Source: Macrostomum lignano
Taxonomy: Eukaryota
DNA: 64,000 nucleotides
Reading direction: 5' to 3'
NCBI GenBank assembly: GCA_002269645.1
Contig: NIVC01001855.1
Span: forward strand, 1 to 64,000
Shown here: positions 1-33,503 of the stretch, in pieces
Numbering within the stretch: the stretch's first letter is position 1
Layout: every line of letters starts with the position of its first letter
Made by a program: the position numbers and the translations under genes
Notes under the pieces: model-generated
The model's input: only the letters and a program-made list of their open reading frames with translations
What the model was told of the DNA's origin: nothing
Database searches by the model: none

Positions 1-67
1 AGTTAAAACCATACTATTTCGAGTTCTCAAGCCGTTTTTTCTCACCCTCTTCCCCTTCTGGATCCAG

Positions 68-343
68 GAACCGTTTCCCCAGTCCACCTTCGCCAGCTGC
101 GGCAACCGGTTTCACAGCGGCTACGATCCGCACAAAGACCGGCTGCTGAAGCCGCCCTATTCTTTCTCCTGCCTCATCTTCATGGCGCTTGAGGCGGCGC
201 CAAACAAGTGCCTACCGGTGCGCCGCATCTACCAGTGGATTGAGCAGAAGTTCCCATTCTACCGCCAGGCTCAGAACGGCTGGAAAATTCCGTCAGACAT
301 AACTTGTCTCTGAATAAGAGCTTTACGAAAAGTGCAGCGGGAT
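68..343 (+). CDS. FoxN2/3: FoxN2/3-type forkhead transcription factor, forkhead exon (N-terminal part of the domain), with two compensating 1-bp indels; gene start lies upstream of the window
   Basis: Acceptor ccag|68, donor 343|gtaagt. Translates EPFPQ...KPPYSFSCLIFMALEAAPNKCLPVRRIYQWIEQKFPFYRQAQNGWK, then NSVRHNLSLNKSFTK in a shifted frame, then VQRD back in the original frame. Confidence 0.9.
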
Positions 344-399
344 GTAAGTAGTGTATTGTGTACTCATTCTTTCATTTTGTTGCATGCACTGTGGGTCTT

Positions 400-1090
400 T
401 TGAATGTCAGTCTTTATTTGCGATCTTTGTGGAATTCATACTCTGTATTAGGGATTTTTGGGATTTCAAATTCTGTGTATTGGGGATTTCGGGATACCAT
501 AATTCATATTCTGTATTGGGGATTTTTGGGATTTCATATTCTGTGTATTGGGGATTTTTTTTTAGATTTCATAATTCATATTCTGTATTGGGATTTTTGG
601 GATTTCATATTCTGTGTATTGCAGATTTTTGGGATTTCATATCCTGTTCGTTAGGGATTTTTTGGATTTCATATTCTGTTTATTGACGATTTTTGGGATT
701 TCATATTTTGTGTATTGGAGATTTTGGGATTTCATATTCTGTGTATTGGGATTTTGGGATTTCATATTCTGTATTGGGGATTTTGGAATTTCATATTGTG
801 TATTGGGAATTTTTTAAATTTCATATTCTGTATATAGGAAATTTTTGGGATTTCATATTGAGTTCATTGGGGATTTTGGGATTTCATATTGTTTGTATTA
901 TAGGGATTTTTTGGATTATATATTCTGCGCATTGGGGACTTTTGGGATTTTATATTCTGTATTGGGGATTTTCGGGATTTGTATTATTTCATATTGTATA
1001 ATGTGAATTTTTAGGATTTTATATTTCATTTTTTGGGGATTTTTTGGATTTCACATACGAGTACTGTCTTGGGGATTTTTTGGATTAAGA
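400..1090. repeat. Degenerate ~30-bp intronic tandem repeat
   Basis: Recurring ttttgggatttcatattctgtgtattgggga-like units. Confidence 0.85.
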
Positions 1091-1121
1091 ATATAATATA
1101 ATAATGATAAATTCGCCACAG

Positions 1122-1361
1122 ACTTCGGCCAAAGGCTCCCTGTGGACCATCGACCCCATGGCCAGGGCTGGCATGCTGCAGGCGCTCAAGAAGACCCCCT
1201 ACCATCCCTACGCTCAGGTGCAAATGTTCAGCGCCACCGGCACCATGTACAAAACTGGCGGCGGTGGAATGAGACGCGAAGCCAAGTCGCCGCTGCCCCT
1301 GCAACAGCAGCAGCAGCAAGGCTCCAGTTACAGTAGCGTGTTAGGCACCATGCTCTTCTAG
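1122..1361 (+). CDS. FoxN2/3: FoxN2/3 exon completing the forkhead domain
   Basis: Acceptor cacag|1122, phase 0, matching the previous donor. KGSLWTIDP...[11 protein letters not shown] matches the FoxN2/N3 signature (human FOXN3 KGSLWCIDP...[11 protein letters not shown], recalled). 3' end unresolved: this frame stops at 1359-1361. Confidence 0.85.
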
Positions 1362-1375
1362 CTCACAGCTCCGCT

Positions 1376-1567
1376 ATGGTCAAAATGGACGACAATGTCA
1401 GTAGCAACTGCGATGACGAACTCGCCAGCGTCTCTGATATCCAGCAGCAGCAGCAGCAGCAGAGAATGCAGTATCACCCCAATGTGAACAGTTTCAAAGG
1501 TCACGTGACGCCTGTCAAAGGGCCGCCGACTTTGAAGCAGCCTTCGCCTTCGGAGTCCCAGCCGCTG

Positions 1568-1599
<32 letters not shown>

Positions 1600-1761
1600 A
1601 CAGCAGCAGCCTGCGATTAAGTCGGAAACCTTCGATGAGGCAGATGAGGACAAGAGCAAGCAGCGCCAGCGCTGCCGTAAGCAGGACTTGCTGCCGTCAG
1701 CGCATCTCTACCCGTTTCTGGCCGCGAAAATGAAACGACTGGTGCACATTCTTGGGATCAG
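1376..1761 (+). CDS. FoxN2/3: Probable FoxN2/3 poly-Q/acidic coding segment
   Basis: GC-rich ORF with CAG poly-Q tracts ending at strong donor atcag|gtgagc (1761/1762). Its link to the preceding frame needs an indel or a short intron. Confidence 0.55.
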
Positions 1762-1769
1762 GTGAGCTG

Positions 1770-2333
1770 CTAAAGACATCTAAAAACAAATCTAGCGGTA
1801 CATCTAGAGACAAACCTAGCGATACATCTAGAGACAAATCTAGCAATACATCTAGAGACAAATCTAATGATACATCTAGAGACAAATCTAGCGATACGTC
1901 TAGAGACTAATCTAGCGATACATCTAGAGACTAATCTAGCGATACAACTGGAGACTAATCTAGCGATACAACTGGAGACTGATCTAGCGATATATCTAGA
2001 GACTAATCTAGCGATACATCTAGAGACTGATCTAGCGATATATCTAGAGACAAATCTAGCAATACATCTAGAGACTAATCTAGCTACATCTAGAGACTGA
2101 TCTAGCGATATATCTAGAGACTAATCTAGCGATACATCTAGAGACTGATCTAGCGATATATCTAGAGACAAATCTAGCAATACATCTAGAGACAAATCTA
2201 GCGATACATCTAGAGACAAATCTAGCGATACATCTAGAGACTAATCTAGCGATACATCTAGAGACTAATCTAGCGATACATCTAGAGACTAATCTAGCGA
2301 TACATCTAGAGACTAATCTAGCGATACATCTAG
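1770..2333. repeat. 24-bp intronic minisatellite
   Basis: Unit ctaatctagcgatacatctagaga. Confidence 0.95.
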
Positions 2334-2363
2334 CTCACTCGTCTTCCACCAATCATCCTAAAG

Positions 2364-3023
2364 GCCGCAGACGGTCAGCAACTGGCCGGCTCAGACGCCA
2401 CCAGCTTGCGCGAACTTCGCCGACAACGCGGCGACATTGTCGACGTCGACGTCGACGAAGACGAAGACGACGATGAAGACGAAGACGGCTACGTAGAGAT
2501 CGAGCAGCCAATCAAGCGGCCGCGCGGCCGGCCCCGCAAAGACTGCGCCCAGATGTACCGCCTGCTGCCGCCCGCGCGCCTGCTGAAGAAAAAGAAGCGC
2601 AAGCGCCGATCGTCGGGCATGCCGTCCGTCAATCAGCTGGTCGCCGCCGCCCAGATGGCCCAGATGAAGCGGGCAGCCACCGCCGCCACGGCCGCCACCG
2701 CCACCGCCACGGCTACCGAAGCCAAACCTGCCGTTTCGAATGCTACTATTAGTAGTGCTGCCACTGTCTCAAATGATACTAGTGACAATGCCAAGGCCGC
2801 CAATGACAAGCCGGCTAGCGACGCCGCTGCTCAATCGTCTTCCTCTTCCAAAGCTAAGCTGCCCGACGCTCGCGCGCTCTATTTGAAGTATCGATGCCAG
2901 AGTAGCGACGACGCGTCTGCGGCGGCGACAACGACAACCGACGCTGCTGCCGGCGAAGCGACGGTGCAGCCGCGACGACTGCCGCCTGTCTGTTGGCGGA
3001 TTGGCCGAGACGCGGGATAAAAT
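2364..3023 (+). CDS. FoxN2/3: Probable FoxN2/3 exon with acidic run, AT-hook-like KRPRGRPRK and basic KKKKRKRR NLS
   Basis: ORF 2406-3020 is GC-rich and low complexity. Candidate acceptor aaag|2364 and donor aat|gtgagc at 3023/3024; phases do not reconcile without a further indel. Confidence 0.5.
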
Positions 3024-3049
3024 GTGAGCGATTTTTTAACCTTTTGTAA

Positions 3050-3290
3050 CGATATGTATCGAAAAAGCATAGCGTTTATGACAAACGAAGCTCACTTGAT
3101 AGTAAAAAATTTGCCGATATGTATGCGAAATTATTTCGCAAAATTGAAGAATCGATATTTATTGAAACTTTATTTTTACTACAGACAAAGTTTAAGGGCC
3201 GATATGTATCGAAAGTTACTTTTACCATTATGTTAAATTAATAAAAGCTATTATAGCAGCTTTGCACTGCCGATATGTATCGAAAGTAGC
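3050..3290. repeat. Degenerate ~70-bp-period repeat (4 copies)
   Basis: Core cgatatgtat(g)cgaaa at about 3051, 3115, 3200 and 3271. Confidence 0.7.
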
Positions 3291-3319
3291 TTATTACTCA
3301 CAAATGCTCGCACCCGCAG

Positions 3320-3611
3320 CCCGATCGAGGAAGCCTCGGTCCTGGCCAGTCTGGCATTGAACGGCGCCACCAGGGAGTCGCAGCCAAGCAGCGAGCCCAT
3401 CGGCACCGCCAACAGCGCCAAGCAGCCACCTGTAGTGGCTTCTCCTATTGTCGTTAAATCGTCAGCTGCGTCGTCTCTGATTGGCTCTCGAGTTCATATT
3501 GTGACGTCATCAGCGAGTCGCTCAGCTTCCGCCGCTGGCTCTGGCAGATTCTCCATCGCCAATGGTGGCAGCGGCATTGTAGTGAAATTGGCCGGTAAAC
3601 CCCTGAATTAA
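3320..3611 (+). CDS. FoxN2/3: Probable terminal FoxN2/3 exon
   Basis: Acceptor cccgcag|3320. Frame reads PIEEASVLASLALNG..., resembling the FoxN3 C-terminal EAAxxLLxLA motif (recalled). Stop TAA at 3609-3611. Confidence 0.45.
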
Positions 3612-3783
3612 ATCAGATATTATTTGTTTTACCTAGTCGTTGGTTTTCCCCGATCGAATGCATGAGAAAGAGTCATTGAATTTTTTATTACTTTCTTTTT
3701 AAACGTTTATCTGTTCTGATCGTCACAGGTAGTAATAATACTATTATTATTAGTTTTTGTTTGATTCGGTCTTGAATAGCTGA

Positions 3784-4827
3784 CAGTAATTGGGGTTTAC
3801 CTGGATGAGTTACAGTGATTGGGTTTACCTGGATGAGCTACAGTAATTGCGGTTTACCTGGATGAGTTACAGTAATTAGGGTTTACCTGGATGAGCTACA
3901 GTAATTGGGTTTACCTGGATGAGTTACAGTAATTGGGGTTTACCTGGATGAGCTACAGTAATTGCGGTTTACCTGGATGAGTTACAGTAATTGGAGTCTA
4001 CCTGGATGAGCTACAGTAATTGGGGTTTACCTGGATGAGCTACAGTAATTGCGGTTTACCTGGATGAGTTACAGTAATTAGGGTTTACCTGGATGAGCTA
4101 CAGTAATTGGGGTTTACCTGGATGAGTTACAGTAATTGGGGTTTACCTGGATGAGCTACAGTAATTGCGGTTTACCTGATGAGTTACAGTAATTGGAGTC
4201 TACCTGGATGAGCTACAGTAATTGGGGTTTACCTGGATGAGTTACAGTAATTGGGGTTTACCTGGATGAGCTACAGTAATTGCGGTTTACCTGGATGAGT
4301 TACAGTAATTGGAGTTACCTGGATGGTTACTATAATTGCGGTTTACCTGGATGAGTTACAGTAATTGGGGTTTACCTGGATGAGTTACAGTAATTGGGGT
4401 TTACCTGGATGAGTTACAGTAATTGGGGTTTACCTGGATGAGTTACAGTAATTGGGGTTTACCTGGATGAGTTACAGTGATTGGGGTTTACCTGGATGTG
4501 TTACAGTGATTGGGGTTTACCTGGATGTGTTACAGTGATTGGGGTTTACCTGGATGTGTTACAGTGATTGGGGTTTACCTGGATGTGTTACAGTGATTGG
4601 GTTTACCTGGATGTGTTACAGTGATTGGGGTTTACCTGGATGTGTTACAGTGATTGGGGTTTACCTGGATGAGTTACAGTGATTGGGGTTTACCTGGATG
4701 AGTTACAGTGATTGGGGTTTACCTGGATGAGTTGCAGTAATTGGGGTTTACCTTGATGAGTTGCAGTAATTGGGGTTTACCTTGATGAGTTACAGTAATT
4801 GGGGTTTACCTGGATGAGCTACAGTAA
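3784..4827. repeat. 29-bp minisatellite between FoxN2/3 and FLCN
   Basis: Unit ttggggtttacctggatgagttacagtaa. Confidence 0.95.
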
Positions 4828-6039
4828 AAGCGACTGATAAACGAGTGTTGTGCAGTTTAAAGGTGACTCCAACTCCAAAACAGATCATACCCGATTTTGT
4901 TGTATTAGTTTATCTGCTGCCAAACTATTTTCAAACGAGGTTTATAGTTGTTAGAAAAACTTATTTTATAGTTAGTGCAATACAATCATTAGTCAGACTG
5001 TGCAATTATCAGTCAGACCCTTAACCACAATATTTTTGTTTGTCTGTTTGCGCTATTTTTTAGTAGGACAAAACGTACTCTTTTTTTCCCTGCTTTTTAT
5101 TGCTATATGTATTGTTTGTTGTACCGCTTATGCCGTTGTACTGTATATATTATTACTTAGTATTTATTTTGACAACGCAATTAACATATGTACTTTAATA
5201 ATAATTTATTTTTCTCATCAATGGCCTTCTGTTTATAATCGCAATCGTTTTTGCTGCCCAACTTATGAAACAAAGTCATTATTATTGTTTATTCAAATTT
5301 TACAAAGTCTACTATTATCTTCCTTACTACCTAATTAATAATGCTTCCTGTCTACCGTAGTAGTATGTGAAGTATTTTATGGCCTATTTTTGCTTTACAT
5401 ACGCCTATCTATTTGTAAATTGTCTTCTTAGTTTGGCTCTCTGTTTTCGTTTGACTCACCAGCTGCTAATTACCTTAGTAATCTCTTTGAGCCCTAGCAG
5501 CAAACGATAAAATATAAGCAAAATTTGTTCTGTACATATTTTCGATTAGTTCAGCGTGTATTTTCAGCATAGTGAACTAATTAACTAGTTATTAGTACCT
5601 GCCTGCTGCTCAATTAGTCTCCTATTAACTGCAATAATAATAATCAATTTATTGATCTCTGATGCAAAGCCTGTCCTCCAATATATTTTGTTTTTTTACC
5701 AACTTTTTGAAACTACAAGTTGCGCACAAGCTGATTTGAATTATCTAACTATTTTAAAGTCAGTATGGTGCTTCATCAAGTTCTTCAATAAAGCTGAATA
5801 TGACTACAACACTTAATTTATTACTGCTTTGTAATATAGGTCGAAATATATTGGACTAGTTGTAGTATAAAGCTTGGAAAGCAAAATTACTGTATTATTT
5901 CAAATTAGTCATTATTCAGTGTTGGTTTTTTGTATGCATTTCCTTGATATTGTTATAAAATAGGGCTTGTTTGGTCCAATCCAAAGTACTAATATTCATA
6001 AATATTAACTTATCGATCTGGTCTATTCCGTATTTTGTA

Positions 6040-6800
6040 TTACAATCAACCCCACTTCGTCGCTTTTATAGGGCTGCTGTAGGCCTGTTGTTATTGATAA
6101 TTACCGATAGGGTCGGCCTCTCAGCCCCACCCTCCTGTTCCTTTTCGGCCAACCCCATTTTATTGATTTTTATAGCGCGTGCTGTGAACCCCACCCCACC
6201 CTGTCCTTCCTATTCCAGTCAACTCCAGCGTGTGGGATGGTTATCGATTATTTGGTCTGCCTCTCGACCCCGCCCCCTTCTTTCCACTCCAGACAACGCT
6301 TATCTTTGCTGTTTTATAGCGTGTGCTGTGATGATCGATTATATGGCTCTGCCAACCAAACCCTCTCAATAGTCTGGCCAACCCTATTCTATTGATTTTT
6401 ATATCGCGTGATGTCATTATCGATCCATTTATCGGCTCTCTCAACTCACCCACTTTCCTATTCCAGCCAACCTCACTTTAACGCTACTACTTTACAATGT
6501 TTGCTGTGGTTATCGATTATCTGGTCTTCCTCTTTAGTCTCAACCCTTTCTTCTTTTCTGACCAACCCTATTCTATTGCTTTTTATTGCGCGTGATGTAG
6601 TTATCGATCCACTCACTTATCTGCTCTCTCAACCCACACCCTCTTTCCTATTTTAGCCAACCCCACTTTTTGTGCTACTGTGGGGTTAACTGGTCTTCCT
6701 CTCGAGTCTCAACCCTACCCTTTCTCCTTGCCGGGCCTCCCCATTTTATTGCTTTTTATCGCGCGTGCTGTTTTTATTGATCTTCTTGTCCATTGTCCAA
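6040..6800. repeat. Highly degenerate long-period (~180-230 bp) repeat
   Basis: Core aaccc(c/t)att(t/c)tattg(a/c)tttttat..cgcgtg(c/a)tgt at about 6151, 6381, 6564 and 6739. Confidence 0.6.
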
Positions 6801-7023
6801 CCCTACCCCTCTATCTTAACCACACCTACATCGCTGTCTATAGGGTGTGCCTGTGGCTATCATTTTCTTGTCTTCCTCTCAACTTCATCACCCCCTCTTT
6901 CTTATCCCTACGACAAGTAGTGAGTGAGCTTGAGAACTTGATAATATCTATTTGATTGGCACTTAAAACCGGAGCACTTAATTGGTTTTTATTATTTCTA
7001 AATCTCAATCCGAAATCTTTCAG

Positions 7024-7875
7024 AACTGTCTCATTGCGCTAACACACTTCTGCGAGGACCACGGTCCTTCAGTAGTGCTATGCATGCAGGTCATGCAACA
7101 GCTGCCCAGCAGCTCCCGTCAACTGCTGGAGGTGGCGCCGACTCCGCCATCCCCAGCCCGAGCCGAGGAGACACTGTTGACCCAGCAGCAGCCTCCGCCC
7201 GCATCCGTGTGCTTCCCAGTTGTCGCCTGCCCTTCCTGCCGATCCATGCCGCCAAACATTCTGGCTATGCACACCGAGGACGCCTCTGCCGGGGTGCACC
7301 TGGTCTCCAGTCAGCACCCCACCTGGCCTAGCCAGTTGTACAGCCGTCTCCGTCAGGCCTGCCTTCGCGTGCACTCCTGCGAAGTTTGTCCAACTAGCGC
7401 CATGTACTTTGGCGACCCGGTCAATGGTCACGTGATGGGCTCGCCGTTTCAACTGGACGATGCCAAGGCTCGGGGTCTGACTAGCCAATACGCTGTCGTT
7501 GTGATGTCCACCGACAGTCGCATGCTGTTGCAGGCCTGGCCTTGGCTGGTGGCTCAGATTGGCAGGATTAGCGGCGCATTGAAGCAGATGGCTACTGCAC
7601 AGTTTCAAGCTGAGCAGCTGCGTCAGGGCAGCGCCAAGGCGACTCGAATCAACGGCTCGAGCTGGTTGAGAATGCGCCGGTCGGATAATCCAGCTAGGTC
7701 ATTGGCTCAGCTCACCGGCGACCCGGCCGTGTTCAAGCGGCTTCATCTCTGGTTCTCCTGGATGCTGCGCGGCTGGCAACGGGAGGAGATTCGGGTGGGC
7801 CGGCCGACTGAGGACGAGCTGGTGGAGGAACTGCAGATGATGGCCGCTGATCAGGACTGCCTGCTGGATAGCGAG
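7024..7875 (+). CDS. FLCN: Folliculin, first coding exon (longin domain); lacks an in-frame genomic ATG
   Basis: Acceptor tctttcag|7024, then NCLIALTHFCEDHGP (human FLCN MNAIVALCHFCELHGP); LRQACLRVHSCEV, MYFGDPVNGHV and LDDAKARGLTSQY follow folliculin motifs. Donor gag|gtgctc at 7875. Confidence 0.92.
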
Positions 7876-8180
7876 GTGCTCATGGGTCATAGTTGAGCTT
7901 TTCAGTGGTCATGGTTTAGCTGCAAGATTGTTATGGATTATGCAGACTCATGAATGATAATGTAGATTTGCTCATAGGTCATAGTTTTACTTTCCTCATA
8001 GGTCATAATTTAAATTCGCTCGTAGGCCATAGTTAAAATTCGCTCATAAGTCATGGTTTAAATTCGCTCATAGGTCATAGTGTAAAATCGCTCATAGGTC
8101 ATAGTTTAAATTCGCTCATAGGTCATAGTTTAAAATCGCTCATAGGTCATAGTTTAAAATCGCTCATAGGTCATAGTGTA
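7876..8180. repeat. ~24-25-bp intronic minisatellite
   Basis: Unit cgctcataggtcatagtttaaaat. Confidence 0.85.
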
Positions 8181-8239
8181 ATTTCATTTAGCTACCGTAA
8201 GCACAATTGTAAATCTACTGTCTACTCAAACCTTCTCAG

Positions 8240-8400
8240 GATTCCGAGGACGAGGGCACCAGAACGGTGGTGCCAACTCCAACCGCTCCCACGGTTTGCA
8301 AACCCGCTGGCGGTAACGCGGTGGTCAGCATCGTGTTCCACTCGCTCAGGCACATCAGGCAGCGGCTAAAACGGGTGCCTGTTACCAACTTGATTGACAG
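8240..8400 (+). CDS. FLCN: Folliculin exon 2
   Basis: Acceptor ttctcag|8240 (phase 0), VFHSLRHIRQ motif, donor ag|gtatga (phase 2). Confidence 0.85.
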
Positions 8401-8446
8401 GTATGATGGAGTACAATGTGCTAAGCTGCATTGCGCAAAGGAACTG

Positions 8447-8718
8447 GTGGATTGCTAATCTAGCCAACTTGACGATTGTAAAATGGATTGCTAATCTAGC
8501 CAACTTGACGATTTTAAAATGGATTGCTAATTTAGCCAACTTGACGATTTTAAAATGGATTGCTAATCTAGTCAACTTAATGATTTTAAAATGGATTGCT
8601 AATCTAGTCAACTTGACGATTTTAAAATGGATTGCTAATCTAGTCAACTTAATGATTTTAAAATGGATTGCTAATCTAGCCAACCTGACTATTGTAAAAC
8701 GGATTGCTAATCTAGCCT
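8447..8718. repeat. 36-bp intronic minisatellite
   Basis: Unit tggattgctaatctagccaacttgacgattttaaaa. Confidence 0.95.
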
Positions 8719-8738
8719 ATTACACCATCTCCCCGCAG

Positions 8739-8960
8739 GTCCGTGTCAGTGCTGGACCCGGACTCGCCGCAGCTGAGTCTGCACAGACAGCCGCACATCT
8801 TCCTCCTCCTCCTGTACCACCTGGTCACCGGCAATCAGATTGTGTTCCGCACCAACCTGCCCGCTCTGGCCGCCTCATTTTTCAAGCTGATGCGACAGAT
8901 TTTGCCGCACAACTGCGTACAAGAGGTGCTGAATTCCAGCGTGTATGAAGAGCCTTACAG
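8739..8960 (+). CDS. FLCN: Folliculin exon 3 (DENN module)
   Basis: Acceptor ccccgcag|8739 (phase 2), LLYHLVTGNQIVFR...YEEPYR, donor ag|gtgagt (phase 2). Confidence 0.9.
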
Positions 8961-8994
8961 GTGAGTCTGGTATGTCATTTTCATTCCTCATTAG

Positions 8995-11040
8995 TCAATG
9001 ACTCATTTCCAACCAATCATCACCAATCAATGACTCATTTTCAACTAATCATCGCAAATCAATGACTCATTTTCAACTAATCATCGCAAATCAATGACTC
9101 ATTTTCAACTAATCATCGCAAATCAATGACTCATTTCCAACTAATCATCGCAAATCAATGACTCATTTTCAACCAATCATCACCGATCAATGACTCATTT
9201 TCAACTAATCATCGCAAATCAATGACTCATTTTCAACTAATCATCGCAAATCAATGACTCATTTCCAACTAATCATCACCAATCAATGACTCATTTTCAA
9301 CTAATCATCGCAAATCAATGACTCATTCCAACTAATCATCGCAAATCAATGACTCATTTTCAACTAATCATCGCAAATCAATGACTCATTTTCAACTAAT
9401 CATCGCAAATCAATGACTCATTTCCAACTAATCATCGCAAATCAATGACTCATTCCCAACTAATCATCGCAAATCAATGACTCATTTTCAACTAATCATC
9501 GCAAATCAATGACTCATTTTCAACTAATCATCGCAAATCAATGACTCATTTCCAACTAATCATCGCAAATCAATGACTCATTTCCAACTAATCATCGCAA
9601 ATCAATGACTCATTTTCAACTAATCATCGCAAATCAATGACTCATTTCCAACTAATCATCACCAATCAATGACTCATTTCAACTAATCATCACCAATCAA
9701 TGACTCATTTTCAACTAATCATCACCAATCAATGACTCATTTTCAACTAATCATCGCAAATCAATGACTCATTTCCAACTAATCATCGCAAATCAATGAC
9801 TCATTTTCAACTAATCATCGCAAATCAATGACTCATTTTCAACTAATCATCGCAAGTCAATGACTCATTTTCAACTAATCATCGCAAATCAATGACTCAT
9901 TTCCAACTAATCATCGCAAATCAATGACTCATTTCAACTAATCATCGCAAATCAATGACTCATTTCCAACTAATCATCGCAAATCAATGACTCATTTTCA
10001 TTTTCAATCAATCATCACCCATCAATGACTCATCTTTAATCAATCATCCTAATCAAAAACTTATTTTTAACCAATCACTATCAATCAATGACTCATTTTC
10101 AACCAATAGTCACCAATCGATTACTCTTTAATCGCCTCAATGACTCATTTTCAATCGATCATCGTCAGTCAATGACTCATTTTCAATCGATCATCAGCCA
10201 ATAACTCATTTTCAATCGATCATCGTCAGTCAATGACTCATTTTCAATCGATCATCGTCAGTCAATGACTCATTTTCAATCGATCATCAGCCAATGACTC
10301 ATTTTCAATCGGTCATCAGCCAATGACTCATTTTCAATCGATCATCAGCCAATGACTCATTTTCAATCGATCATCAGCCAATGACTCATTTTCAATCGAT
10401 CATCGTCAGTCAATGACTCATTTTCAATCGATCATCGTCAGTCAATGACTCATTTTCAATCGATCATCAGCCAATGACTCATTTTCAATCGGTCATCAGC
10501 CAATGACTCATTTTCAATCGATCATCAGCCAATGACTCATTTTCAATCGATCATCAGTCAATGACTCATTTTCAATCGATCGTCAGCCAATGACTCATTT
10601 TCAATCGATCATCAGTCAATGACTCATTTTCAATCGATCATCAGTCAATGGCTCATTTTCAATCGATCATCAGCCAATGACTCATTTTCAATCAATCATC
10701 AGTCAATGACTCATTTTCAATCGATCATCAGCCAATGACTCATTTTCAATCGGTCATCAGCCAATGACTCATTTTCAATCGATCATCAGCCAATGACTCA
10801 TTTTCAATCGATCATCAGCCAATGACTCATTTTCAATCGATCATCAGCCAATGACTCATTTTCAATCGATCATCAGTCAATGGCTCATTTTCAATCGATC
10901 ATCAGCCAATGACTCATTTTCAATCGATCATCAGTCAATGACTCATTTTCAATCGATCATCAGTCAATGACTCATTTTCAATCGATCATCAGCCAATGAC
11001 TCATTTTCAATCGATCATCAGTCAATGACTCATTTTCAGT
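8995..11040. repeat. Bipartite intronic minisatellite (32-bp units, then 29-bp units)
   Basis: aatgactcattttcaactaatcatcgcaaatc up to ~9990, then aatgactcattttcaatcgatcatcagcc from ~10140. Confidence 0.95.
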
Positions 11041-11081
11041 CATTGTCAGTCACTGACAAATTTGCAATTTCCAAACCGCAG

Positions 11082-11592
11082 GTGCAACTTCCTTGGCCTG
11101 GCCTGGGAGGCGGTCATCCCGGACATTGTGCTCACCGATCCCGTCAGCCATCCGATGCTCGTGCTGGAATGCCGCGCTGACCTTCGCAGCCTGGCAGCCG
11201 AATCCTTTGCCTCTGTTGACGACCTGGCCGTGAGCTGCGCCACCAACTGCCCCGTGCCCAGCAGCGCCTACAACTCCCTGCTGGGACTGCCCGGACTTAT
11301 CGACGAGCTGGACAAACTGCTGGACAGTCAGCAGCTTCCAGATGAAGCTCTGGACCTGCTGGTCACCAACGTCAAGGAGGACTGGTTGAACAGGGCAAGA
11401 CAGTTTTTCACCTGCTGCTACGTGCAAGGCGCTCAGCAGCAGCAGCTGAGCAATGCGCAGGTCTCTGAACTGCTCGACAGCCTGGGCTGCTCGCGTAACG
11501 ACGAACTGGTGCTGAAGTTCTGGACTAGAGGCCTGGCCGCCACCAGCAGGAGGGAGATTCAAGGCCTGGGTGGTAAGGTTGGTAGTAGGTAG
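11082..11592 (+). CDS. FLCN: Folliculin terminal exon
   Basis: Acceptor ccgcag|11082, RCNFLGL...VLKFWTRGL, stop TAG 11590-11592. The four exons total 1746 nt = 581 residues plus Met, similar to human FLCN (579 aa). A donor near 11574 cannot be excluded. Confidence 0.88.
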
Positions 11593-11890
11593 GTTGGTCA
11601 GGTAGGTAGGTTGTTGGGTTGGTCAGGTAGGTTGGTAGGTAGGCAGGTTGATCAGGTAGGTAGGTAAGTTGTTAGGTAGGCTGGAACGTAGGTTGGTAGG
11701 TTGGTCAGGTAGGTAGATAGGTTGATCAGTTAGGTAGGTTGGTAGGTTGGTTGGTAGGTTGGTCAGGTAGGTAGGTCATGTAGGTTGGTAGATAGGTCGG
11801 TAGGTAGGTTGGTTAGTAGATAAATAGTTTGGTAGGCAGGATTGTAGGTAGTTTAGAAGGCAGGTTTATAGCTACGTTGGTAGGCAGGTA
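11572..11890. repeat. Degenerate (GGTA/GGTT)n low-complexity tract
   Basis: Direct inspection. Confidence 0.85.
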
Positions 11891-13437
11891 GATCAGACAG
11901 AAAAATTGATTAGTTTTGATTATCAAATGACTTACTGCAGCATTTTTACCTACGCTAGCTCTGTATTTAATGCGTTGATGCTGATAGAATTTGTGGAACT
12001 AACGCCTAATACTGATTTATATTGTTAAAATAATAGATGTACTCCATGTACTTGAAGATATTGTTGTGTACATAGGAGATTCCTACAATGTACAATACTA
12101 AGCTAGAAAATTTTTCCTTTGGCAGTCAGGAATATGCTAAATTGTATGTACATGACATGTACGAGTCATCCTATGTACATTGTAGAATGTACTGTAGATT
12201 GAGAAAGATAAGATTTTATTGTTTTTTGCTTACTCATGTTTGAGTATTTTTCTTAATACGTTTGGAATTCGTTTTGGTGGCAAAGTTGTGGCTTTATATT
12301 GGAACTGCTGAACAGGATCTGCACTTCCATATTTTTACTGTTCGAGTGTTATTATTAAAAGTACAACTGTGCGAATTGCATATCTGGATGCAATCGGAAT
12401 TTTTGTTATTGTCTTGTTTAAAATTGCTGCACGTTACAGACAGTTTATTAATAATATATAAGATTATCTGTTTTCAATCTGCTCATATTTATAGTTTTGC
12501 CCCCAATCCTTTGGTGCAATAATTGCAAGCATATCGCGCTGCCAAAACTGTTTAGTGTTTGATGCCCAGCAGCACCATCAAAAGCTTTCACACCCCACAA
12601 TACTGGGGTGTTGCTTTATGAATAATACAGTAATATCGTGTCTCTTTCTCCTACTATTTTTGAAGAGCATATTTTCGTGGATTTTTTAAGCAACTGTATT
12701 GGAGCCCTGAATTAATCTTCGATGCGCGGAATTTGCGCATTCTATTAACAGTAGTATATGCTGCATGTAATACACGACAGTGTTCGGGAACTTGGCAGTT
12801 CGGGTTTTTTATGGCCAAAACAATCTTAAATCCAGTTTTTTGTTATTAACAACTAAATTCGAACAAAGCGTTGCAGTATTTGATTTATTTATTTCTGTAC
12901 AGCTGTACACTTATTGTCTACTGTAAGCACAGATACTAGATAACTGGATGGGCCACTCAGCACATTTGCGTGTAAGCTACTTTCAGTTCAGTAGTAAGTT
13001 AAACAGAAGCGTTTTAATGTATTTTAAAGCCAAGGCTCAATTTATTGGCTCTTACCCCCCCCCCCAGCTAAAAACCCTTCCAACGGCGCCTTTCCACACC
13101 ACCCCCAATTTTTATTGCCTTTCTCGGAATTCCAGCCTAAAGCTGCCATGTACATTTCAGTGGACTGGCTAATGTACATTATTGCTGAACCAATTAGCAA
13201 GTTGTTTACGCCTGCAAGCTTTGGGCTTCTAAACTTATCAAAGTCGTTTAAGCAGCCTTTATTTTTATAAAATAGCTTATGTATTCGTCTTTGCTACTGA
13301 ACTGGAAGTAAAAAGCTGTTTTACTTATTTACTAAGATGCCTGAGTGGCCCATCCAGTTATTCTGTGACTATAAGTAGTATCTGACGCAAATATGAAATC
13401 GCATTACAAAGTATGAATCCAACACCAAGAAAAGTGT

Positions 13438-13815: not shown

Positions 13816-14178
13816 CTGAAGGGGGAAATTCAGATAAAATGAGGTTGATGCCAATTCTGCCACTGCCGTCGTGCAGCATGCTAACAACTACATTATGAAC
13901 CAGATTTTTAGAGAATTTCAAAATAATATACTCGTAATTTATGCCTGATAGACGTACTGTACTGAGTCTGTGATGGGGGTTGCAACTTGCACTCTGTACT
14001 GTATTTCTAACCTGTGTGCTTCCCAGAGTTGTTACCCAATTACAGTACAAGGACATCTTAAGTAGAGACTTACTTGAGAAGTCCGCTTAACCCATATACG
14101 CTCGACGCTGGTAGATTTACGCGTAAAATACTCGTTTTTAATTTTACATATTACTAGTAGTAGCAAGGATTTTTCTAC

Positions 14179-15258
14179 CTGAGTAGCGCCCAGCACAGTC
14201 ATGCTGAGATGGCCGCCGCTCACAATGGCAAAGCTGGTGGCCGAATCAAAGCAGACCGCCCCGGGCCGAAGCGTGACGCTCTCCCGACTGGCGTTGATGA
14301 GGTCCGGATCGAAGTCCGCCTCCGAGCTGGGGTAGGGGCCCAGGCCGAGCACCCCGTTCTCCGAGTGCAGGAAGACGTTCAGGCCGCGTGGCACGCAGCT
14401 GGCGGCCAGCATCGGGATGCCCAGGCCGACGTTCGCGAAGCTGTCAGCCTTGAACTCGGCGGCGACTCGGCGAGCGATGGTCATCAACGCCGGCTGCTGC
14501 TGGCGCGAGGTCGCCCGCTTCAGCACTCGCCTCGCCTCCGGCCGCTGCTTCTCCGCCAGCACCAGGCCCTGCACGAACACCGAGGGCACGTGGATCTGGT
14601 CCGCTGGCAACTGTCCGCAGTCGACAATCTCTTCGACCTCGGCGATGGCGACCCGAGCCGCCTGGCACATGATCCCGTTGAAGTTGTTCGCCGACATCCG
14701 GAACTGCAGGTTGCCGGCCCGGTCGGCGCGCCAGGCCTTCACCAGGGCGACATCGGCTTTCAGCGCCGTCTCGAGCACGTGCTCCACCCCGTCGAACAGG
14801 CGCGTCTCCTTTGCCGCGGTGACCTCCAGAACGCCGCCGTCGGGTCCGTATCGGAGCGGCACGCCGCCGTTTGCGATGGCGGTGCCAACGCCGGCGCGGG
14901 TGTAGAAGGCCGCCAGCCCGGAGCCGCCAGCCCGGATCCTCTCGGCGAAGGTGCCCTGCGGCAGGAGCTGCAGCTCCAGCTGGCCCAGCAGGTGACGCTG
15001 GTAGATCTCGCGGTTGGCGCCAATGTAGGTGGTGAGCAGACTTTGCACCCGACGCCTTGATATGAGCCGGCCGAGCCCAGAGTCCGGACTGCCCCCAGTG
15101 CCCGAGATCAGCGTCAGGCCTTCGGCGCCGCTCTGCAGCACCTGAGCCAGCAGGCCTTCGGGCGAGCCGCAGTGACCGAAGCCGCCAACCATGACTGAGC
15201 AGCCGGAGTGCACATTGTTGAGCACGGCTTCCAAGCAGCTGTCGTATTCGATTACCAT
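14179..15258 (-). CDS. OXCT1: Succinyl-CoA:3-oxoacid CoA-transferase (SCOT/OXCT-like, fused A+B), exon 1
   Basis: VGGFGHCGSPE, PQGTFAERIRAGG, KAWRADRAGN, GLGIP and HSENGVLGLGPYP (catalytic Glu motif). Donor cag|gtagaa at 14179/14178, phase 0. Confidence 0.93.
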
Positions 15259-15761
15259 ACTGAGTTTATTTGCCTCTCTGAAAGTTACACTTTAATGTTG
15301 CAGAGCACACTGAATCTTGGCCTCACTAGCCTCACCTGCATACTCAGTATATGTAGTGCAGTTTCTGAGCCTCCCTTGTGCAAACGACAACATCTTTAAA
15401 TAAATCTTGCATTGTATGACGTTTACTGACGATGTGTGCTAAAAATAGACTTTTAGCTGTGTCTGTGTGCTATTTTTAGACTCAGATTGCACTAGCATGG
15501 GAAAGCACTCTATTCAGTTAGATTTTCCTATGGAAAAGTACATCTAACTCCCAACTCAGTGTGTTGCTAGGTCGTCCGACAGTGCTAGCGAGCTATTTTC
15601 ACTCGTAGCCACCACCTAGTAAAATTGTTTGCCACCAATGCTTAACTTTCTCGACAAGAACAGGATACCATGGATCAACTGTACTGTACTGTGTACAGTG
15701 TACCTTACAGACAACACAGTCACCCCTGAGTCCCTGAGTCACTTGGATATTTCTTTGCTGA

Positions 15762-21832: not shown

Positions 21833-22209
21833 TCAGGCTCACTCTACTCAAATTTTAACCATTTTCAATCGCAACCAGAGCTCCAGCCCGAGCACTTTGA
21901 TCTCGCTCTCAAAGCTGCTACTCAGCTCGAGTTTGAGCAGCTGCCAAATTTCCCAATGCTGCCAACAAAGCTGATTCCCTAATCCGATCGGGACAGTTCG
22001 GCCTAAATTGTCACTTTCCCATCAGATCTCTCTGTGTTCTTCTGTTGATTGGTCTGTGAAGCATTCGAGCTGCAGGCAGACAGCAGATTGGGATTTGGCC
22101 ATTTGTCGTCCCCGCATCTGGAGCGCCTACATGTATATATACAAATAATTATGGGAGTTTTTGGTTAGGGAGGCAACAGGAAAAGAGTGAAATTCTTGGC
22201 CTAATGTGT

Positions 22210-22800
22210 TTTGATGTCTTTTGGTGTTTTAGTTTGTCTTGATGTGTCTTGATGTCTTTTGGTGTGTGTGTTAGTTTGTCTTGATGTGTCTTGATGTGTC
22301 TTGATGTCTTTTGGTGTGTGTGTTAGTTTGTCTTGATGTGTCTTGATGTGTCTTGATGTCTTTTGGTGTGTGTGTTAGTTTGTCTTAATGTGTCTTGATG
22401 TGTCTTGATGTCTTTTGGTGTGTTCTTGGTGTGCCTTGATGTCTTTCGGTGTGTTTTGGTGTGTCTTGGTCTGTCTTGATGTGTCTTGATGTCTTTTGGT
22501 GTGTCTTGGCGTGTCTTGATGTGTCTTGATGTGTCTTGATGTGTCTTGATGTCTTTTGGTCTGTCTTGGTGAGTCTTGGTGTGTCTTGGTGTGTCTTGAT
22601 GTGTCTTGATGTGTCTTGATGTCTTTTGGTCTGTCTTGGTGAGTCTTGGTGTGTCTTGATGTGTCTTAAAGTGTCTTGGTGTGCTTTGGTGTGTCTCGGT
22701 GTGTCTTGGTGGGTCTTGATGAGTATTGATGTGTCTTGTGTCTTTTTTGTCTTGATGTGTCTTGATGTGTCCTGATGTGACTTGGTGTGTCTTGGTGTGC
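22210..22800. repeat. Degenerate ~10-bp repeat
   Basis: Units gatgtgtctt and ggtgtgtctt. Confidence 0.9.
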
Positions 22801-23280
22801 CATGGTGGGATTTACCTGTATTGATGTGTCTCTGGGTCTGTCTCCATGAGCTTAGTTTGTATTTGTGACTGTGAAAAGTTTTATTTTCCTTCATTAATTA
22901 GCGGGGGCTCAAGATTGCTAGTCTACATCTGAAAGAATCGCAGGGCCAGTACGCCTGCACATCCATTTTAATACGATATCTATTCTCAGAGAAAGTACAA
23001 ACAGCCAAATCCAATAAAATATGTCGCATAGAAAACATGATCCGAATTTCATTTTCTATAGCCAGCTACTGTTAGATTAATTTAATCAACATCAGTACCA
23101 TGCGGCCGCAGACTCCCCAACAAGAATCTGATAGCTACGCCCCAAGCAGCCAATCATAACGCGCAGACTTGGGCTATAAGAGCCACGCGAAGTTTCTACC
23201 GCCAGTTTCTCCCGCTGTCGCGCAGAAAGTTGCCCTGAAAAATGGTCTCGAGCGCCAAGTCTCACCAGCTGCTCAGCACG

Positions 23281-23567
23281 ATGGATACAAATCTCACCTG
23301 TCAATCATCGCCCAGACTAATCGTGGAGCACCTGGCCAATCAGTCTGGCTGTCGCTTGCTTGACAGCGAGCTGCGCTGGGAGCTGGCGCTGACTTTCTAC
23401 TCGCCTCTGGCCCTGTGCTGCACCGGGTTCCTGTTGAACTTGGTCAACTTCTGCGTGCTGCGCAAGCCGCAGTTTGATGGCCAGGCCTACAAGTACATGG
23501 CGGCCATTGCGCTGGTTGATGCCGCCTTCTTGCTGGTGTACACCTTGTACGTGTCCACCGCGCAGAG
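23281..23567 (+). CDS. Class A (rhodopsin-like) peptide GPCR, exon 1 (N-terminus, TM1-TM2)
   Basis: ATG at 23281 (MDTNLT...NQS glycosylation sequons; an in-frame ATG at 23242 is an alternative). TM1 GFLLNLVNFCVL, TM2 YMAAIALVD. Donor ag|gtgagt, phase 2. Confidence 0.85.
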
Positions 23568-23599
23568 GTGAGTCACGGCCTGCGCATTTCGTTTCTAGC

Positions 23600-24230
23600 T
23601 CGTCTCTATCTCATGTCTATCTCATGTCTATCTCATCTCTATCTCATCTATTTCTCATCAATATCTCATGTCTATCTTATCTCTATCTCATGTCTATCTC
23701 ATCTCTATATCATGTCTATATCATCTCTATTTCACCTTAATCTCACGTCTATGTCATGTCTATCTCATCTATATCTCATTTATATCTCATCTCTATTTCA
23801 CCTTAATCTCATGTCTATCTCATGTCTATCTCATCTATATCTCATTTATGTCTCATCTCTATCTCATCTCTTTCTCATCTCTATCTTACGTCTATCTCAT
23901 GTCTATCTCATATCTATCTCATCTCTATCTCAAATCTATGTCATGTCTATCTCATCTCTATCTCATCTCTATCTCACCCATATCTCATCTCTATCTCAAA
24001 TCTATCTCACCCATATCTCATCTCTATCTCAAATCTATCTCACCCATATCTCATCTCTATCTCAAATCTATCTCACCCATATCTCATCTCTATCTCAAAT
24101 CTATCTCACCCATATCTCATCTCTATCTCAAATCTATCTCACCCATATCTCATCTCTATCTCATCTCTATCTCAAATCTATCTCACCCATATCTCATCTC
24201 TATCTCATCTCTATCTTATCTATACCTCAT
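23600..24230. repeat. Intronic (tctatctca)n-type repeat
   Basis: Direct inspection; includes a more regular ~36-bp sub-array at about 23960-24200. Confidence 0.9.
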
Positions 24231-25346
24231 GTTTTATCATTTCCACCTGATCTTAAGCGAGCACACTGAAAAATCTTGCAGAACCGCATCCACCTCAACT
24301 AATAGCATGGCGTTTATTATTAAAGGAAAAGAAATTTGCTACAAAAAAGCTTTCATGAAATTATCTGAGAACTAAGAGTAGCAATTCATTCAGATAGGCT
24401 AAGCAGTAGAAAATGAAGCAGTTTGACTTCTCCTATAGAAAGTACAGGCAAACACTCGAAGCAGATGGAAAAACAGTTGCACCTGACTGATCTCGTCAAT
24501 GCCAGATCAGAAAACAATATTTTTATTGTGAAAGAGAAATCCACCGTTTTTTATGACCTACAAAAAACCTCTTGAATGCCACCTTGCTCACAGCAACAGC
24601 AGCAGCACCTGCTAGGTGTCAGGGATCATTGTTCTGAGTAGGCCAGCTTTGCAGCATGACCAGTATCCTCATTGTCAAAGGATGCTTTGCTGAGCCTCAC
24701 ACCTTTGACACACAATCGCGTGTCTCTCCGCTCTTTTCTCGAGGCGTTTTCTAAGAAATTCAAAAGAAGCAATAGCTGCTCAAAGAAAGAATGTGACACT
24801 TCTCGGTACTCAACATGCCTACCAGGTGGAAAGCCTGAGAACGGCATCTATCCACCCACACCCACGCCTGATGGGCAGAGCCATATTAGTACACAGAATA
24901 TGAGCCCGAGCTTTCCAGAATTTCCGTCAGCTGGGAGAGTCTCATGGCTGAGAATGAGATCTCCGCGAAGCTCTGCTGATTTGGAGCCAAGCGGAAATCT
25001 CAAATATTTGCTCACCAGAGGCTCCCTGCTGTTTATCGGCTTGGAATGGGGGAGGAGGATGGGGCTGAGCGATAAGAGAGGCTGGAGTAGCTGAGATTTT
25101 GTTGTTTAGCAAAAAATTATATATTTGCACCTCAACTGCTTGCGGTATTGCTTCTTCTCTGATGCAGCATCGGGACATTGTCAGTCAGGAAGCTGGGCTG
25201 CTGAAGTGGTTCTGCAACTCCTCGATGCTAGCTGTTACTAGCTGTAATCAGAAGATATATGATTGCATCACAAATTGACAGATAAATAAATAAATTAACA
25301 TAGCTCAAATTCAATAATTGTTCTTGACGGAGATTGAGATATTGAT

Positions 25347-26689
<1,343 letters not shown>

Positions 26690-27044
26690 AAAATCAAGAT
26701 AATAAAATCATTCAAAACGCTCTCAAACTGATTAAACAGCTCATTCAATCAGATGAACTGCAGCAGAATAATGGAAATGCGCCGGTTTCTTGAAATTTCT
26801 CTGCCTCCAGCGTCAAGAAGAGTAAAATATGAATGGGGAAAATTTCTATAGAAGCAGAAGGGCATTCAGTGCTAAATTAATTGCCCTGCAACTGCAGCCT
26901 GACACTGGGAGTCAGACTTAATCCATCAAGCTGGAGTGCAGATTAGTACCCGTTCTGCAATTGTCGAGTATAGAGACAGGACAAGGAAATTGCGACTGAA
27001 AATAAGACATTAAATGTGTTTTAGTAACATTGAAAAAACGACTA

Positions 27045-27155
<111 letters not shown>

Positions 27156-27184
27156 CACGCAGACACCCAAACCTCTCCCCGCAG

Positions 27185-27743: not shown

Positions 27744-27782
27744 GTGAGCCGCACTGTAAACTGTGTAGGCAAATGCAAAAGA

Positions 27783-32775: not shown

Positions 32776-33346
32776 TACGGCAAACAGAAAAACAAAACAC
32801 TAATAGACAAAGCAAGCAGATATGTGTATCTTTTTTCTTGCGTGTAGAAATTTGGCATTGATAAATCGATATTAGCAATTTTGGCGTTGTTTATTAGAAT
32901 TTGATGATAAAAAGATGGGTTAAAATGACAAAATAGGTAGAATGGCTGTGAGGTTAGCAAATGTGAATTTTTTTTTCAAATAGGAGTGGCGTCAAAAAAT
33001 GATTTTAATGGCGCCAAAAGGAGCTATTTGCGCCAGAAGGGAATTCATGGCGCCATAAAGAAAAATAGTTTCTTTCACTTCCTAAAAAGTAATTTGTAAC
33101 TAAAATCTAAACAGTCAATTAATATTGTATTTCATCGAGCACAATTTGATTACCGATATGTAACGAAACTAACTCTATAGGTAGGAAAAAGGTTCTGGTT
33201 TGAAGAATCATTTTGCAAGTAAGTCTCAATAAAAATTGCAAAAAATCAAAAAGTAAACAGTTTTGCACCAATGGAAAAATCTTTATCGCTAAACGTTTCT
33301 TTTCAAATATCAATTACTTTTCTGAGGGTAATGACTAACTACATGT

Positions 33347-33436: not shown

Positions 33437-33503
<67 letters not shown>

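What the first reader, a model, noticed from the sequence alone, without database searches (positions are those of the whole stretch)
6979..7090. Folliculin has no genomic start codon: Met1 may be donated by the AUG at the end of a trans-spliced leader
Seen: the acceptor (tctttcag, 7016-7023) is followed in phase 0 by AAC TGT CTC ATT GCG CTA ACA CAC TTC TGC GAG (NCLIALTHFCE). This aligns to residue 2 onward of folliculin (human MNAIVALCHFCELHGP), so exactly one Met is missing. The frame has a TAA at 6979-6981 and no ATG before the acceptor. The first in-frame ATG (7084) would delete the conserved HFCExHGP motif. Established: flatworm spliced leaders end in AUG, which can act as the initiator codon. 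Inference: this gene depends on SL trans-splicing for its start codon. The ATG|GT candidates I noticed upstream (~4323, ~5765, ~6237) are weak donors, although the gene's own first donor (gtgctc) is weak too.
Basis: partly seen in the sequence, partly recalled or inferred. Interest (0 to 1): 0.85.

Follow-up and report, generated by a model that had tools for sequence, protein, structure and literature searches.

The report
Folliculin start codon supplied by trans-splicing
In the flatworm Macrostomum lignano the folliculin gene begins in the genome at codon 2, right after a splice acceptor, so its start codon almost certainly comes from the AUG that ends the trans-spliced leader; this is a clean new example of a mechanism already known in flatworms, not a new mechanism.

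Summary
The acceptor tctttcag (7016-7023) is followed by AAC TGT CTC..., which aligns to residue 2 onward of human folliculin. There is an in-frame TAA at 6979-6981 and no ATG between it and the acceptor.

The window is Macrostomum lignano Mlig_3_7, contig NIVC01001855.1, bases 1-64000. This flatworm has a 35-nt spliced leader that ends in ...TTGCATG. GenBank's RNA-seq-based model (PAA63318.1/PAA82963.1, "partial") starts its CDS at exactly 7024, without a Met. The annotation pipeline cut transcripts at sites where SL-containing reads mapped.

All six genomic folliculin copies show the same anatomy: YAG|AAC TG, an upstream in-frame TAA, and no ATG. They fall into two old paralog groups that are 51-60% identical. 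All eight protein models, from two independent annotations, lack Met.

Codons 2-21 are under purifying selection (8 synonymous against 2 conservative changes), so this segment is translated.

An SL-donated initiator AUG was documented in Schistosoma by Cheng et al. 2006 and in Echinococcus. I could not see SL-bearing reads for this gene; that step is inferred.

Verdict: interpretation supported (about 0.85). It is a new member of a known kind and of modest interest.

The parts
3609..7023 (+). Putative outron or intergenic region between the stop of the upstream forkhead gene and the folliculin acceptor. It contains a 29-bp minisatellite (3783-4827) and degenerate repeats of about 90-190 bp (about 6030-6810).
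   Evidence: There is no similarity to the upstream region of the paralog. No annotated exon lies here in any copy.
6979..6981 (+). In-frame TAA that closes the folliculin reading frame 15 codons upstream of AAC.
7016..7023 (+). 3' splice acceptor tctttcag. Its last six bases, TTTCAG, fit the M. lignano trans-splice acceptor motif [T/C]TNCAG.
   Evidence: the motif comes from PMC8629364.
7024..7875 (+). Folliculin exon 1, codons 2-285 of the inferred 582-aa protein. It starts at AAC (Asn2) and holds the HFCEDHGP motif and the Folliculin N domain.
   Evidence: It is identical to PAA63318.1/PAA82963.1.
7080..7086 (+). Out-of-frame ATG (7080-7082) followed 4 nt later by the first in-frame genomic ATG (7084-7086, codon 21).
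   Evidence: The out-of-frame ORF 7002-7328 runs through this region.
8240..8400 (+). Folliculin exon 2.
8739..8960 (+). Folliculin exon 3.
11082..11592 (+). Folliculin exon 4 (Folliculin_C domain), with stop TAG at 11590-11592. The UniProt/ML2 models instead use an extra terminal intron (11578-11940).
2..3608 (+). 3' part of a forkhead-domain gene on the same strand, cut by the contig start. It is a possible upstream cistron.

Best explanation
The folliculin pre-mRNA of Macrostomum lignano is SL trans-spliced at the AG at 7022-7023. The 35-nt leader CGGTCTCTTACTGCGAAGACTCAATTTATTGCATG is joined directly to AAC at 7024. The leader's terminal AUG is its only AUG. It becomes codon 1 and lies in frame, giving Met-Asn-Cys-Leu-Ile-Ala-Leu-Thr-His-Phe-Cys-Glu, the canonical folliculin N-terminus, and a 582-aa protein.

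Shown:
- the genomic anatomy;
- the identity of the organism;
- the annotated 5' end of the CDS at the acceptor;
- conservation of the arrangement in all six copies and both paralog groups;
- purifying selection on codons 2-21.

Taken from the literature:
- the SL sequence and its GTAAG donor;
- the fact that the annotation's transcript ends were set by SL-read peaks;
- the fact that flatworm SL AUGs can initiate translation.

Inferred:
- that SL reads map to this particular acceptor;
- that ribosomes start at the SL AUG on this mRNA.
For: 1. Organism: one search places the gene at 7024-11592 of NIVC01001855.1 (GCA_002269645.1, M. lignano), the same coordinates as the window.
2. Annotation: one search shows the annotated protein P0151 ("partial") equals my 4-exon model and starts at Asn, with no Met.
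3. All models: searches show that all 8 M. lignano folliculin models (NCBI Mlig_3_7 and UniProt/ML2) lack Met. Four of them start at exactly NCL.
4. All copies: one search shows all 6 genomic copies have YAG|AACTG, an in-frame TAA upstream, and no ATG in between.
5. Selection: one search finds 8 synonymous against 2 conservative nonsynonymous codon differences in codons 2-21 between the paralog groups. Identity is 48/60 downstream of the acceptor and 21/60 upstream of it.
6. No conserved upstream block: (blastn, E >= 2.3).
7. SL: (PMC8629364) give an SL that ends in ATG followed by GTAAG, report 30% of genes as trans-spliced, and give the acceptor motif [T/C]TNCAG.
8. Annotation method: (PMC5730564) describes TBONE, which cuts transcripts at peaks of SL-trimmed reads.
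9. Precedent: searches cover use of the SL AUG as initiator in S. mansoni and E. granulosus. (PMC10468722) calls the final ATG of the Macrostomum SL a translation start codon.
10. Contrast: one search shows that the neighbouring genes Josephin, CoA-transferase and Branch have ordinary ATG starts, so partial starts are not a general defect of the annotation.
Against: - No SL-bearing read, cDNA or peptide for this gene could be inspected.
- Searches for the gene ids and for folliculin in paper supplements found nothing.
- Two of the six models (L001 and L006) start 2-3 codons downstream of the acceptor rather than at it. I cannot explain this.
- The context of the SL AUG (U at -3) is weak by vertebrate Kozak rules.
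- ATG|GT sites at 5765 and 6237 are present in all three near-identical copies. A rare cis-spliced isoform is therefore not excluded by sequence alone.
Confidence: 0.85

Rival explanations
1. A cis-spliced upstream exon that ends in ...ATG (for example at 5765, atg|gtgctt, or at 6237) supplies Met1 and a conventional 5' UTR. The annotation simply missed it.
For: ATG|GT sites exist at 5765 and 6237 and are kept in the three near-identical copies. The donor at 5765 (gtgctt) resembles the gene's own first donor (gtgctc). Parasitic flatworms often share acceptors between cis- and trans-splicing (PMC12582326).
Against: None of 8 models from two independent transcript-based annotations has such an exon. 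A transcript with an upstream exon would have given either a complete CDS or a longer partial one. There is no conserved block upstream between the paralog groups. The 4323 site is missing from L002 and L004. The donors do not fit GT[G/A]AG.
Confidence: 0.07
2. Translation starts at the first genomic in-frame AUG (7084, codon 21) and gives a folliculin without the HFCExHGP segment. The SL AUG, if present, is skipped.
For: The SL AUG has a weak context (U at -3), and leaky scanning is possible. Some UniProt/ML2 models start even further downstream (P0153 and P0154).
Against: Codons 2-21 are conserved at the protein level with mostly synonymous change, so they are translated. Paralog group B has Thr, not Met, at codon 21 (MCTQ), although a Met sits two codons earlier at codon 19. 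An out-of-frame AUG at 7080 would capture scanning ribosomes first. The N-terminal motif is present at a fixed distance from Met1 in 89 of 118 homologues.
Confidence: 0.04
3. Non-AUG initiation occurs in the genomic sequence between the TAA and the acceptor on an unspliced transcript.
For: In the window copy, a TTG (6982) and two ATT codons lie between the stop and AAC.
Against: In paralog group B only three codons (CCC TCT CAG) separate the TAA from AAC, and none is a near-cognate start. The 14 upstream codons are not conserved. The sequence ends in a strong acceptor.
Confidence: 0.02
4. The gene is a 5'-truncated pseudogene or an assembly or annotation artefact.
For: GenBank flags the models as 'partial'. 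The window copy lies near a contig start.
Against: Six copies on six contigs carry intact 544-581-codon ORFs with both folliculin domains. Purifying selection is evident. The models are built from RNA-seq.
Confidence: 0.02

Closest known systems
SL 3'-terminal AUG used as initiator methionine in flatworms (Cheng, Cohen, Ndegwa & Davis 2006, J Biol Chem 281:733; Schistosoma mansoni and S. japonicum; also Echinococcus granulosus, PMC3510090)
   Same: The SL ends in AUG. The acceptor sits exactly where codon 2 of a conserved protein begins. There is no in-frame genomic AUG, so the conserved N-terminus is restored only if the SL AUG is codon 1.
   Different: The species is a free-living macrostomorph, outside Neodermata, and the gene (folliculin) is not reported in those lists as far as I could search. 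Here the dependence is kept in two old paralogs. No cDNA or translation assay exists for this case.
Macrostomum lignano SL trans-splicing as annotated in Mlig_3_7 (Wudarski et al. 2017, PMC5730564; Ustyantsev & Berezikov 2021, PMC8629364)
   Same: Same organism, same SL and same acceptor motif. The gene model's 5' end coincides with an acceptor, as expected for a TBONE-cut trans-spliced gene.
   Different: Those papers do not discuss the SL AUG as a start codon and do not mention this gene. The GenBank record simply calls the CDS partial.
slORFs, i.e. ORFs created by start codons in spliced leaders (slORFfinder, PMC9851317)
   Same: The start codon is supplied in trans by the leader.
   Different: slORFfinder deals mostly with near-cognate NUG codons in nematodes, tunicates and kinetoplastids, and with novel ORFs. 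Here a canonical AUG restores a conserved protein's own Met1.
Human folliculin (FLCN; PDB 6ulg and 6nzd)
   Same: It aligns from residue 2 to about 289 at E = 1.9e-36. The HFCExHGP motif, the Folliculin N domain and the Folliculin_C domain are all present.
   Different: By the sequence alignment here, the human protein carries Met1 directly ahead of Asn2. The worm gene has a splice acceptor at that point.

Membership tests
Folliculin (FLCN) protein family | Folliculin N-terminal (longin-type) domain, Pfam PF11704 | tested here: met
   E = 1.3e-39, 136 bits against a cut-off of 23.3, covering profile positions 2-165 of 166.
Folliculin (FLCN) protein family | Folliculin C-terminal (DENN-type) domain, Pfam PF16692 | tested here: met
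   exon 4 scores E = 2.6e-11, 44 bits against a cut-off of 27. Precomputed hits for P0151 appear.
Folliculin (FLCN) protein family | Conserved N-terminal HFCExHGP motif at a fixed distance from Met1 | tested here: met
   HFCEDHGP is present. It lies one residue closer to the model's start than in 89 of 118 homologues, which means Met1 is absent from the genome.
mRNAs that take their initiator Met from the flatworm SL 3' AUG | The organism has an SL RNA whose exon ends in AUG immediately before the donor | tested here: met
   Organism identified (M. lignano). The SL ...TTGCATG followed by GTAAG comes from PMC8629364 and PMC5173321. I did not see the SL RNA gene itself; it is not in the window.
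mRNAs that take their initiator Met from the flatworm SL 3' AUG | The acceptor lies in phase, so that the SL AUG is directly followed by codon 2 of the conserved ORF | tested here: met
   AG|AAC, with Asn aligned to residue 2 of human FLCN, in all six genomic copies.
mRNAs that take their initiator Met from the flatworm SL 3' AUG | No in-frame genomic AUG between the nearest upstream stop and the acceptor | tested here: met
   TAA lies 15 codons upstream in group A and 4 codons upstream in group B, with no ATG in between.
mRNAs that take their initiator Met from the flatworm SL 3' AUG | SL sequence observed on the mature mRNA at this acceptor (reads, cDNA or RACE) | not testable with these tools
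   The evidence is only indirect. The annotated 5'-partial CDS starts at exactly 7024, and the pipeline set such ends from SL-read peaks.
mRNAs that take their initiator Met from the flatworm SL 3' AUG | Translation actually initiates at the SL AUG | not testable with these tools
   This needs ribosome profiling, N-terminal proteomics or a reporter. Purifying selection on codons 2-21 shows only that initiation is at or upstream of codon 2.
Downstream gene of an SL-resolved operon (M. lignano definition, PMC8629364) | Same-strand upstream gene at a repeat-adjusted distance of 1 kb or less, with the downstream gene trans-spliced | tested here: inconclusive
   A forkhead gene lies upstream on the same strand in both paralog groups. 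The raw distance is 3.4 kb in group A and 4.2-5.1 kb in group B. About 1 kb is a minisatellite and about 0.8 kb more is degenerate repeat. The forkhead poly(A) site is unknown.

The most novel reading that the evidence does not exclude
Folliculin's complete dependence on the SL for its start codon has been kept through an old duplication, together with a same-strand forkhead-to-folliculin gene pair. This could mean that the two genes form a conserved operon. It could also mean that production of this mTORC1-pathway regulator is gated by trans-splicing and by the SL/TMG-cap translation route, linking nutrient signalling to SL-dependent translational control in a stem-cell-rich flatworm.
Probability: 0.1. 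Interest if true: 0.55.

Novelty: new member of a known kind. Interest (0 to 1): 0.3.

Why it matters
1. It corrects an annotation. The GenBank and UniProt folliculin entries of M. lignano are labelled partial, or are truncated, only because the SL with its ATG was trimmed. The true protein is very likely Met plus the 581 annotated residues. The same artefact probably affects many of the roughly 22,000-28,000 trans-spliced genes in this assembly. Counting 5'-partial CDSs that begin at an SL acceptor in phase with the SL AUG would give a genome-wide estimate of SL-AUG use.

2. It extends SL-AUG-dependent genes from parasitic Neodermata to an early-branching free-living flatworm. This supports the view that the terminal AUG of flatworm SLs is kept because some genes need it.

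3. M. lignano is transgenic-tractable, so this locus would be a convenient reporter for testing SL-AUG initiation in vivo.

It does not reveal a new mechanism.

Tried and rejected
- a homologous-protein search with exon 1 returned nothing, although a 100% identical protein is in the collection. It was found only through, so the word index is patchy.
- the ATG7084-to-stop ORF is not on record.
- there are no Rfam hits and no SL RNA gene in the window.
- no paper text or held supplement mentions Mlig027378, Mlig000131, Mlig009567, Mlig020878, folliculin or FLCN in a trans-splicing list.
- the search meant to recover the transcriptional-unit name of the upstream forkhead gene returned only a UniRef fragment.
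- I tried to rebuild the 777-aa forkhead protein by enumerating GT-AG exon chains. This gave more than 200 solutions, so I abandoned it.
- homologues with odd N-termini turned out to be fungi and amoebae, plus one AT-rich Logan transcript of unidentified origin with no flatworm-type leader. No other flatworm folliculin locus was examined.
- the Wasik et al. 2015 paper is not held.
- I considered and rejected the idea that the window came from a different Macrostomum species. The 60% identity to P0001 reflects a paralog, not an ortholog.

Full report
**1. The observation**

The sequence is as described.
- tctttcag lies at 7016-7023. AAC starts at 7024, and the frame reads NCLIALTHFCEDHGPSVVLCMQ....
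- TAA at 6979-6981 is in the same frame. The 14 codons between it and the acceptor hold no ATG.
- The first in-frame ATG is at 7084 (codon 21). An out-of-frame ATG lies 4 nt before it, at 7080.
- The exon-1 translation hits Pfam Folliculin at 1.3e-39.
- Against solved structures, residue 1 of the query aligns with residue 2 of human folliculin (6ulg_L, E = 1.9e-36).
- Among 149 representative homologues from a 1.84-billion-protein library, 118 have a recognisable HFCE-type motif near the N-terminus. In 89 of these it sits exactly 8 residues after Met1, and 60 of the 89 begin with MN. In this gene it sits 7 residues after the first encoded residue, so exactly one residue, the Met, is missing from the genome.

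**2. What and where it is**

The best relative in the representative search (P0001, 60% identical) comes from Macrostomum lignano assembly GCA_002269645.1. A second search found P0151, [quoted passage not shown]. Its sequence equals the four-exon model I had built by hand: 7024-7875, 8240-8400, 8739-8960 and 11082-11592 including the stop. P0151 is encoded at 7024-11592 of contig NIVC01001855.1, range 1-21592. The window is therefore bases 1-64000 of that contig.

**3. The organism's spliced leader**

M. lignano has one SL, CGGTCTCTTACTGCGAAGACTCAATTTATTGCATG.
- In the SL RNA gene it is followed by the donor GTAAG.
- About 30% of genes are trans-spliced.
- The enriched trans-acceptor motif is [T/C]TNCAG (PMC8629364). 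The same leader appears in a longer form in PMC5173321.
- The window's TTTCAG fits that motif.
- By inspection, the leader contains no ATG other than the terminal one.
- Joined to 7024, it gives ...UUGCAUG|AAC UGU CUC, that is Met-Asn-Cys-Leu..., the canonical folliculin N-terminus.

**4. Indirect transcript evidence**

The Mlig_3_7 annotation was built from RNA-seq. Reads containing the SL were trimmed and mapped, and the TBONE pipeline cut transcripts at the resulting peaks before TransDecoder called ORFs (PMC5730564).

A 5'-partial ORF starts at the first in-frame codon of its transcript. An in-frame TAA lies only 45 nt upstream, and the CDS begins at exactly 7024. The transcript model must therefore start at 7022-7024, on the acceptor. 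The only reason in that pipeline for a transcript to start on an AG| is a trans-splice peak, or an SL-trimmed de novo transcript.

This is an inference from the annotation logic. I did not see the reads.

Neighbouring genes in the related loci (Josephin, CoA-transferase, Branch) have ordinary ATG starts. Partial starts are therefore not a general flaw of the annotation.

**5. Conservation**

M. lignano has six genomic folliculin copies in two groups: A (window/L003, L002, L004) and B (L001, L005, L006). Proteins of the two groups are 51-60% identical.
- All six copies read YAG|AAC TG..., with an in-frame TAA upstream (15 codons away in A, 4 in B) and no ATG between.
- All eight protein models, six from NCBI and the rest from the independent ML2/UniProt annotation, lack Met. 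Four start at exactly NCL.
- Between groups A and B, codons 2-21 differ at 10 codons: 8 synonymously and 2 conservatively (I/V and L/M).
- The 60 nt downstream of the acceptor are 48/60 identical, against 21/60 upstream.
- blastn finds no conserved block anywhere in the 3.4-10 kb upstream regions (E >= 2.3).

The coding constraint therefore begins exactly at the acceptor, and this segment is translated. In group B the three codons between the stop and AAC (CCC TCT CAG) are not near-cognate start codons. That rules out genomic non-AUG initiation as a shared solution.

**6. Rivals**

*A cis exon ending in ATG.*
- The 4323 site is a variant unit of a minisatellite and is absent from L002 and L004.
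- The 5765 and 6237 sites are kept, but in copies that are 99.3-99.7% identical overall, so this says nothing.
- 6237 lies inside a degenerate repeat whose other units lack the ATG.
- No model in either annotation has an upstream exon.
- I give this rival about 0.07.

*Initiation at codon 21.* This is contradicted by three things:
- selection on codons 2-21;
- the out-of-frame ATG at 7080;
- paralog B, which has Thr rather than Met at codon 21, although it has a Met two codons earlier, at codon 19.

*Pseudogene or artefact.* This is contradicted by six intact copies with both domains.

**7. Comparison with what is known**

Flatworm SLs end in AUG.
- Cheng et al. 2006 showed this AUG can serve as the initiator. 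The SL AUG is in frame in 28% of S. mansoni trans-spliced transcripts, and more than 40 cDNAs need it (as summarised in PMC9851317).
- In E. granulosus the use of the SL AUG is conserved among orthologues in Neodermata (PMC3510090).
- The AUG is conserved in nearly all parasitic-flatworm SLs (PMC12582326).
- For Macrostomum, Wiberg et al. 2023 note that the final ATG of the SL is likely a translation start codon, and they left it untrimmed (PMC10468722).

The mechanism is therefore established. Folliculin in M. lignano is a further instance. It appears to be unreported: there were no hits for the gene ids or for folliculin in paper text or held supplements.

**8. Verdict**

It is a new member of a known kind.

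Its practical value is twofold:
- it corrects an annotation, since the GenBank "partial" flag hides a complete gene;
- it offers a clean test locus in a transgenic-tractable flatworm.

Interest is about 0.3.

The most novel reading not excluded is a conserved forkhead-folliculin operon, or a regulatory coupling of this mTORC1-pathway gene to SL-dependent translation. It rests only on the conserved same-strand gene pair, and I give it about 0.1.

Noticed in passing
window 2-3608 (+); L002 1604-6640; L004 2291-6613; L005 1-4913; L006 1-5781: A forkhead-domain gene lies upstream of folliculin on the same strand in both old paralog groups, 3.4-5.1 kb away. This conserved gene pair may be a polycistronic unit resolved by trans-splicing.
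   Followed up: partly
L002 about 1590-1610 and L004 about 2275-2295 (upstream of the window's contig start): The forkhead models are also 5'-partial and begin next to an acceptor (ttccag|TAA...). There the SL AUG would be followed at once by TAA, so that gene cannot use the SL AUG. This is a useful contrast to folliculin.
   Followed up: partly
window 46041-64000: An 18-kb array of a 49-bp satellite (about 369 copies, 98% matches, strong G over C skew) runs to the end of the window.
   Followed up: no
window 7966-8185, 8448-8717, 8995-11038, 3783-4827: Each of the three folliculin introns, and the upstream outron, carries its own minisatellite (units of 24, 36, 32/29 and 29 bp). The whole window is packed with such arrays (38 TRF rows).
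   Followed up: no
window 11578-11958: The two annotations disagree on the folliculin C-terminus. NCBI reads through to ...GKVGSR* (stop 11590-11592). The UniProt/ML2 models splice AAG|gt (11577/11578) to 11941 and end in ...GKHFYLR* (stop at 11956-11958).
   Followed up: partly
L001 9995-10001 and L006 9992-10001: Two of the six paralog models start 2 or 3 codons downstream of the acceptor (LVAL..., VALT...) rather than at AAC. The cause is unknown; it may be read trimming or the mapping of transcript ends.
   Followed up: no
window 14035-15291 (-): A long exon of a CoA-transferase gene (SCOT/OXCT-like; Pfam CoA_trans, 1.4e-70) converges on the folliculin 3' end. It is annotated in L002 and L004 but is not listed for this contig (L003).
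   Followed up: partly
window 35031-35417, 41342-41683, 43596-43925 (all -): Three exons carry a GST C-terminal domain (GST_C_2, E = 1e-6 to 4e-9) and share the motif MADLMIWPW. This looks like a tandem family of GST-omega-like genes.
   Followed up: partly
window 25344-26689 and 33346-35009: Two very long tetranucleotide microsatellites: (GATA)n with 336 copies and (TAAC)n with 416 copies.
   Followed up: no
tool behaviour: The word-indexed protein search missed a 100% identical database protein when queried with exon 1. It found the same protein when queried with a 51% identical paralog. Negative results from that tool should not be read as absence.
   Followed up: yes
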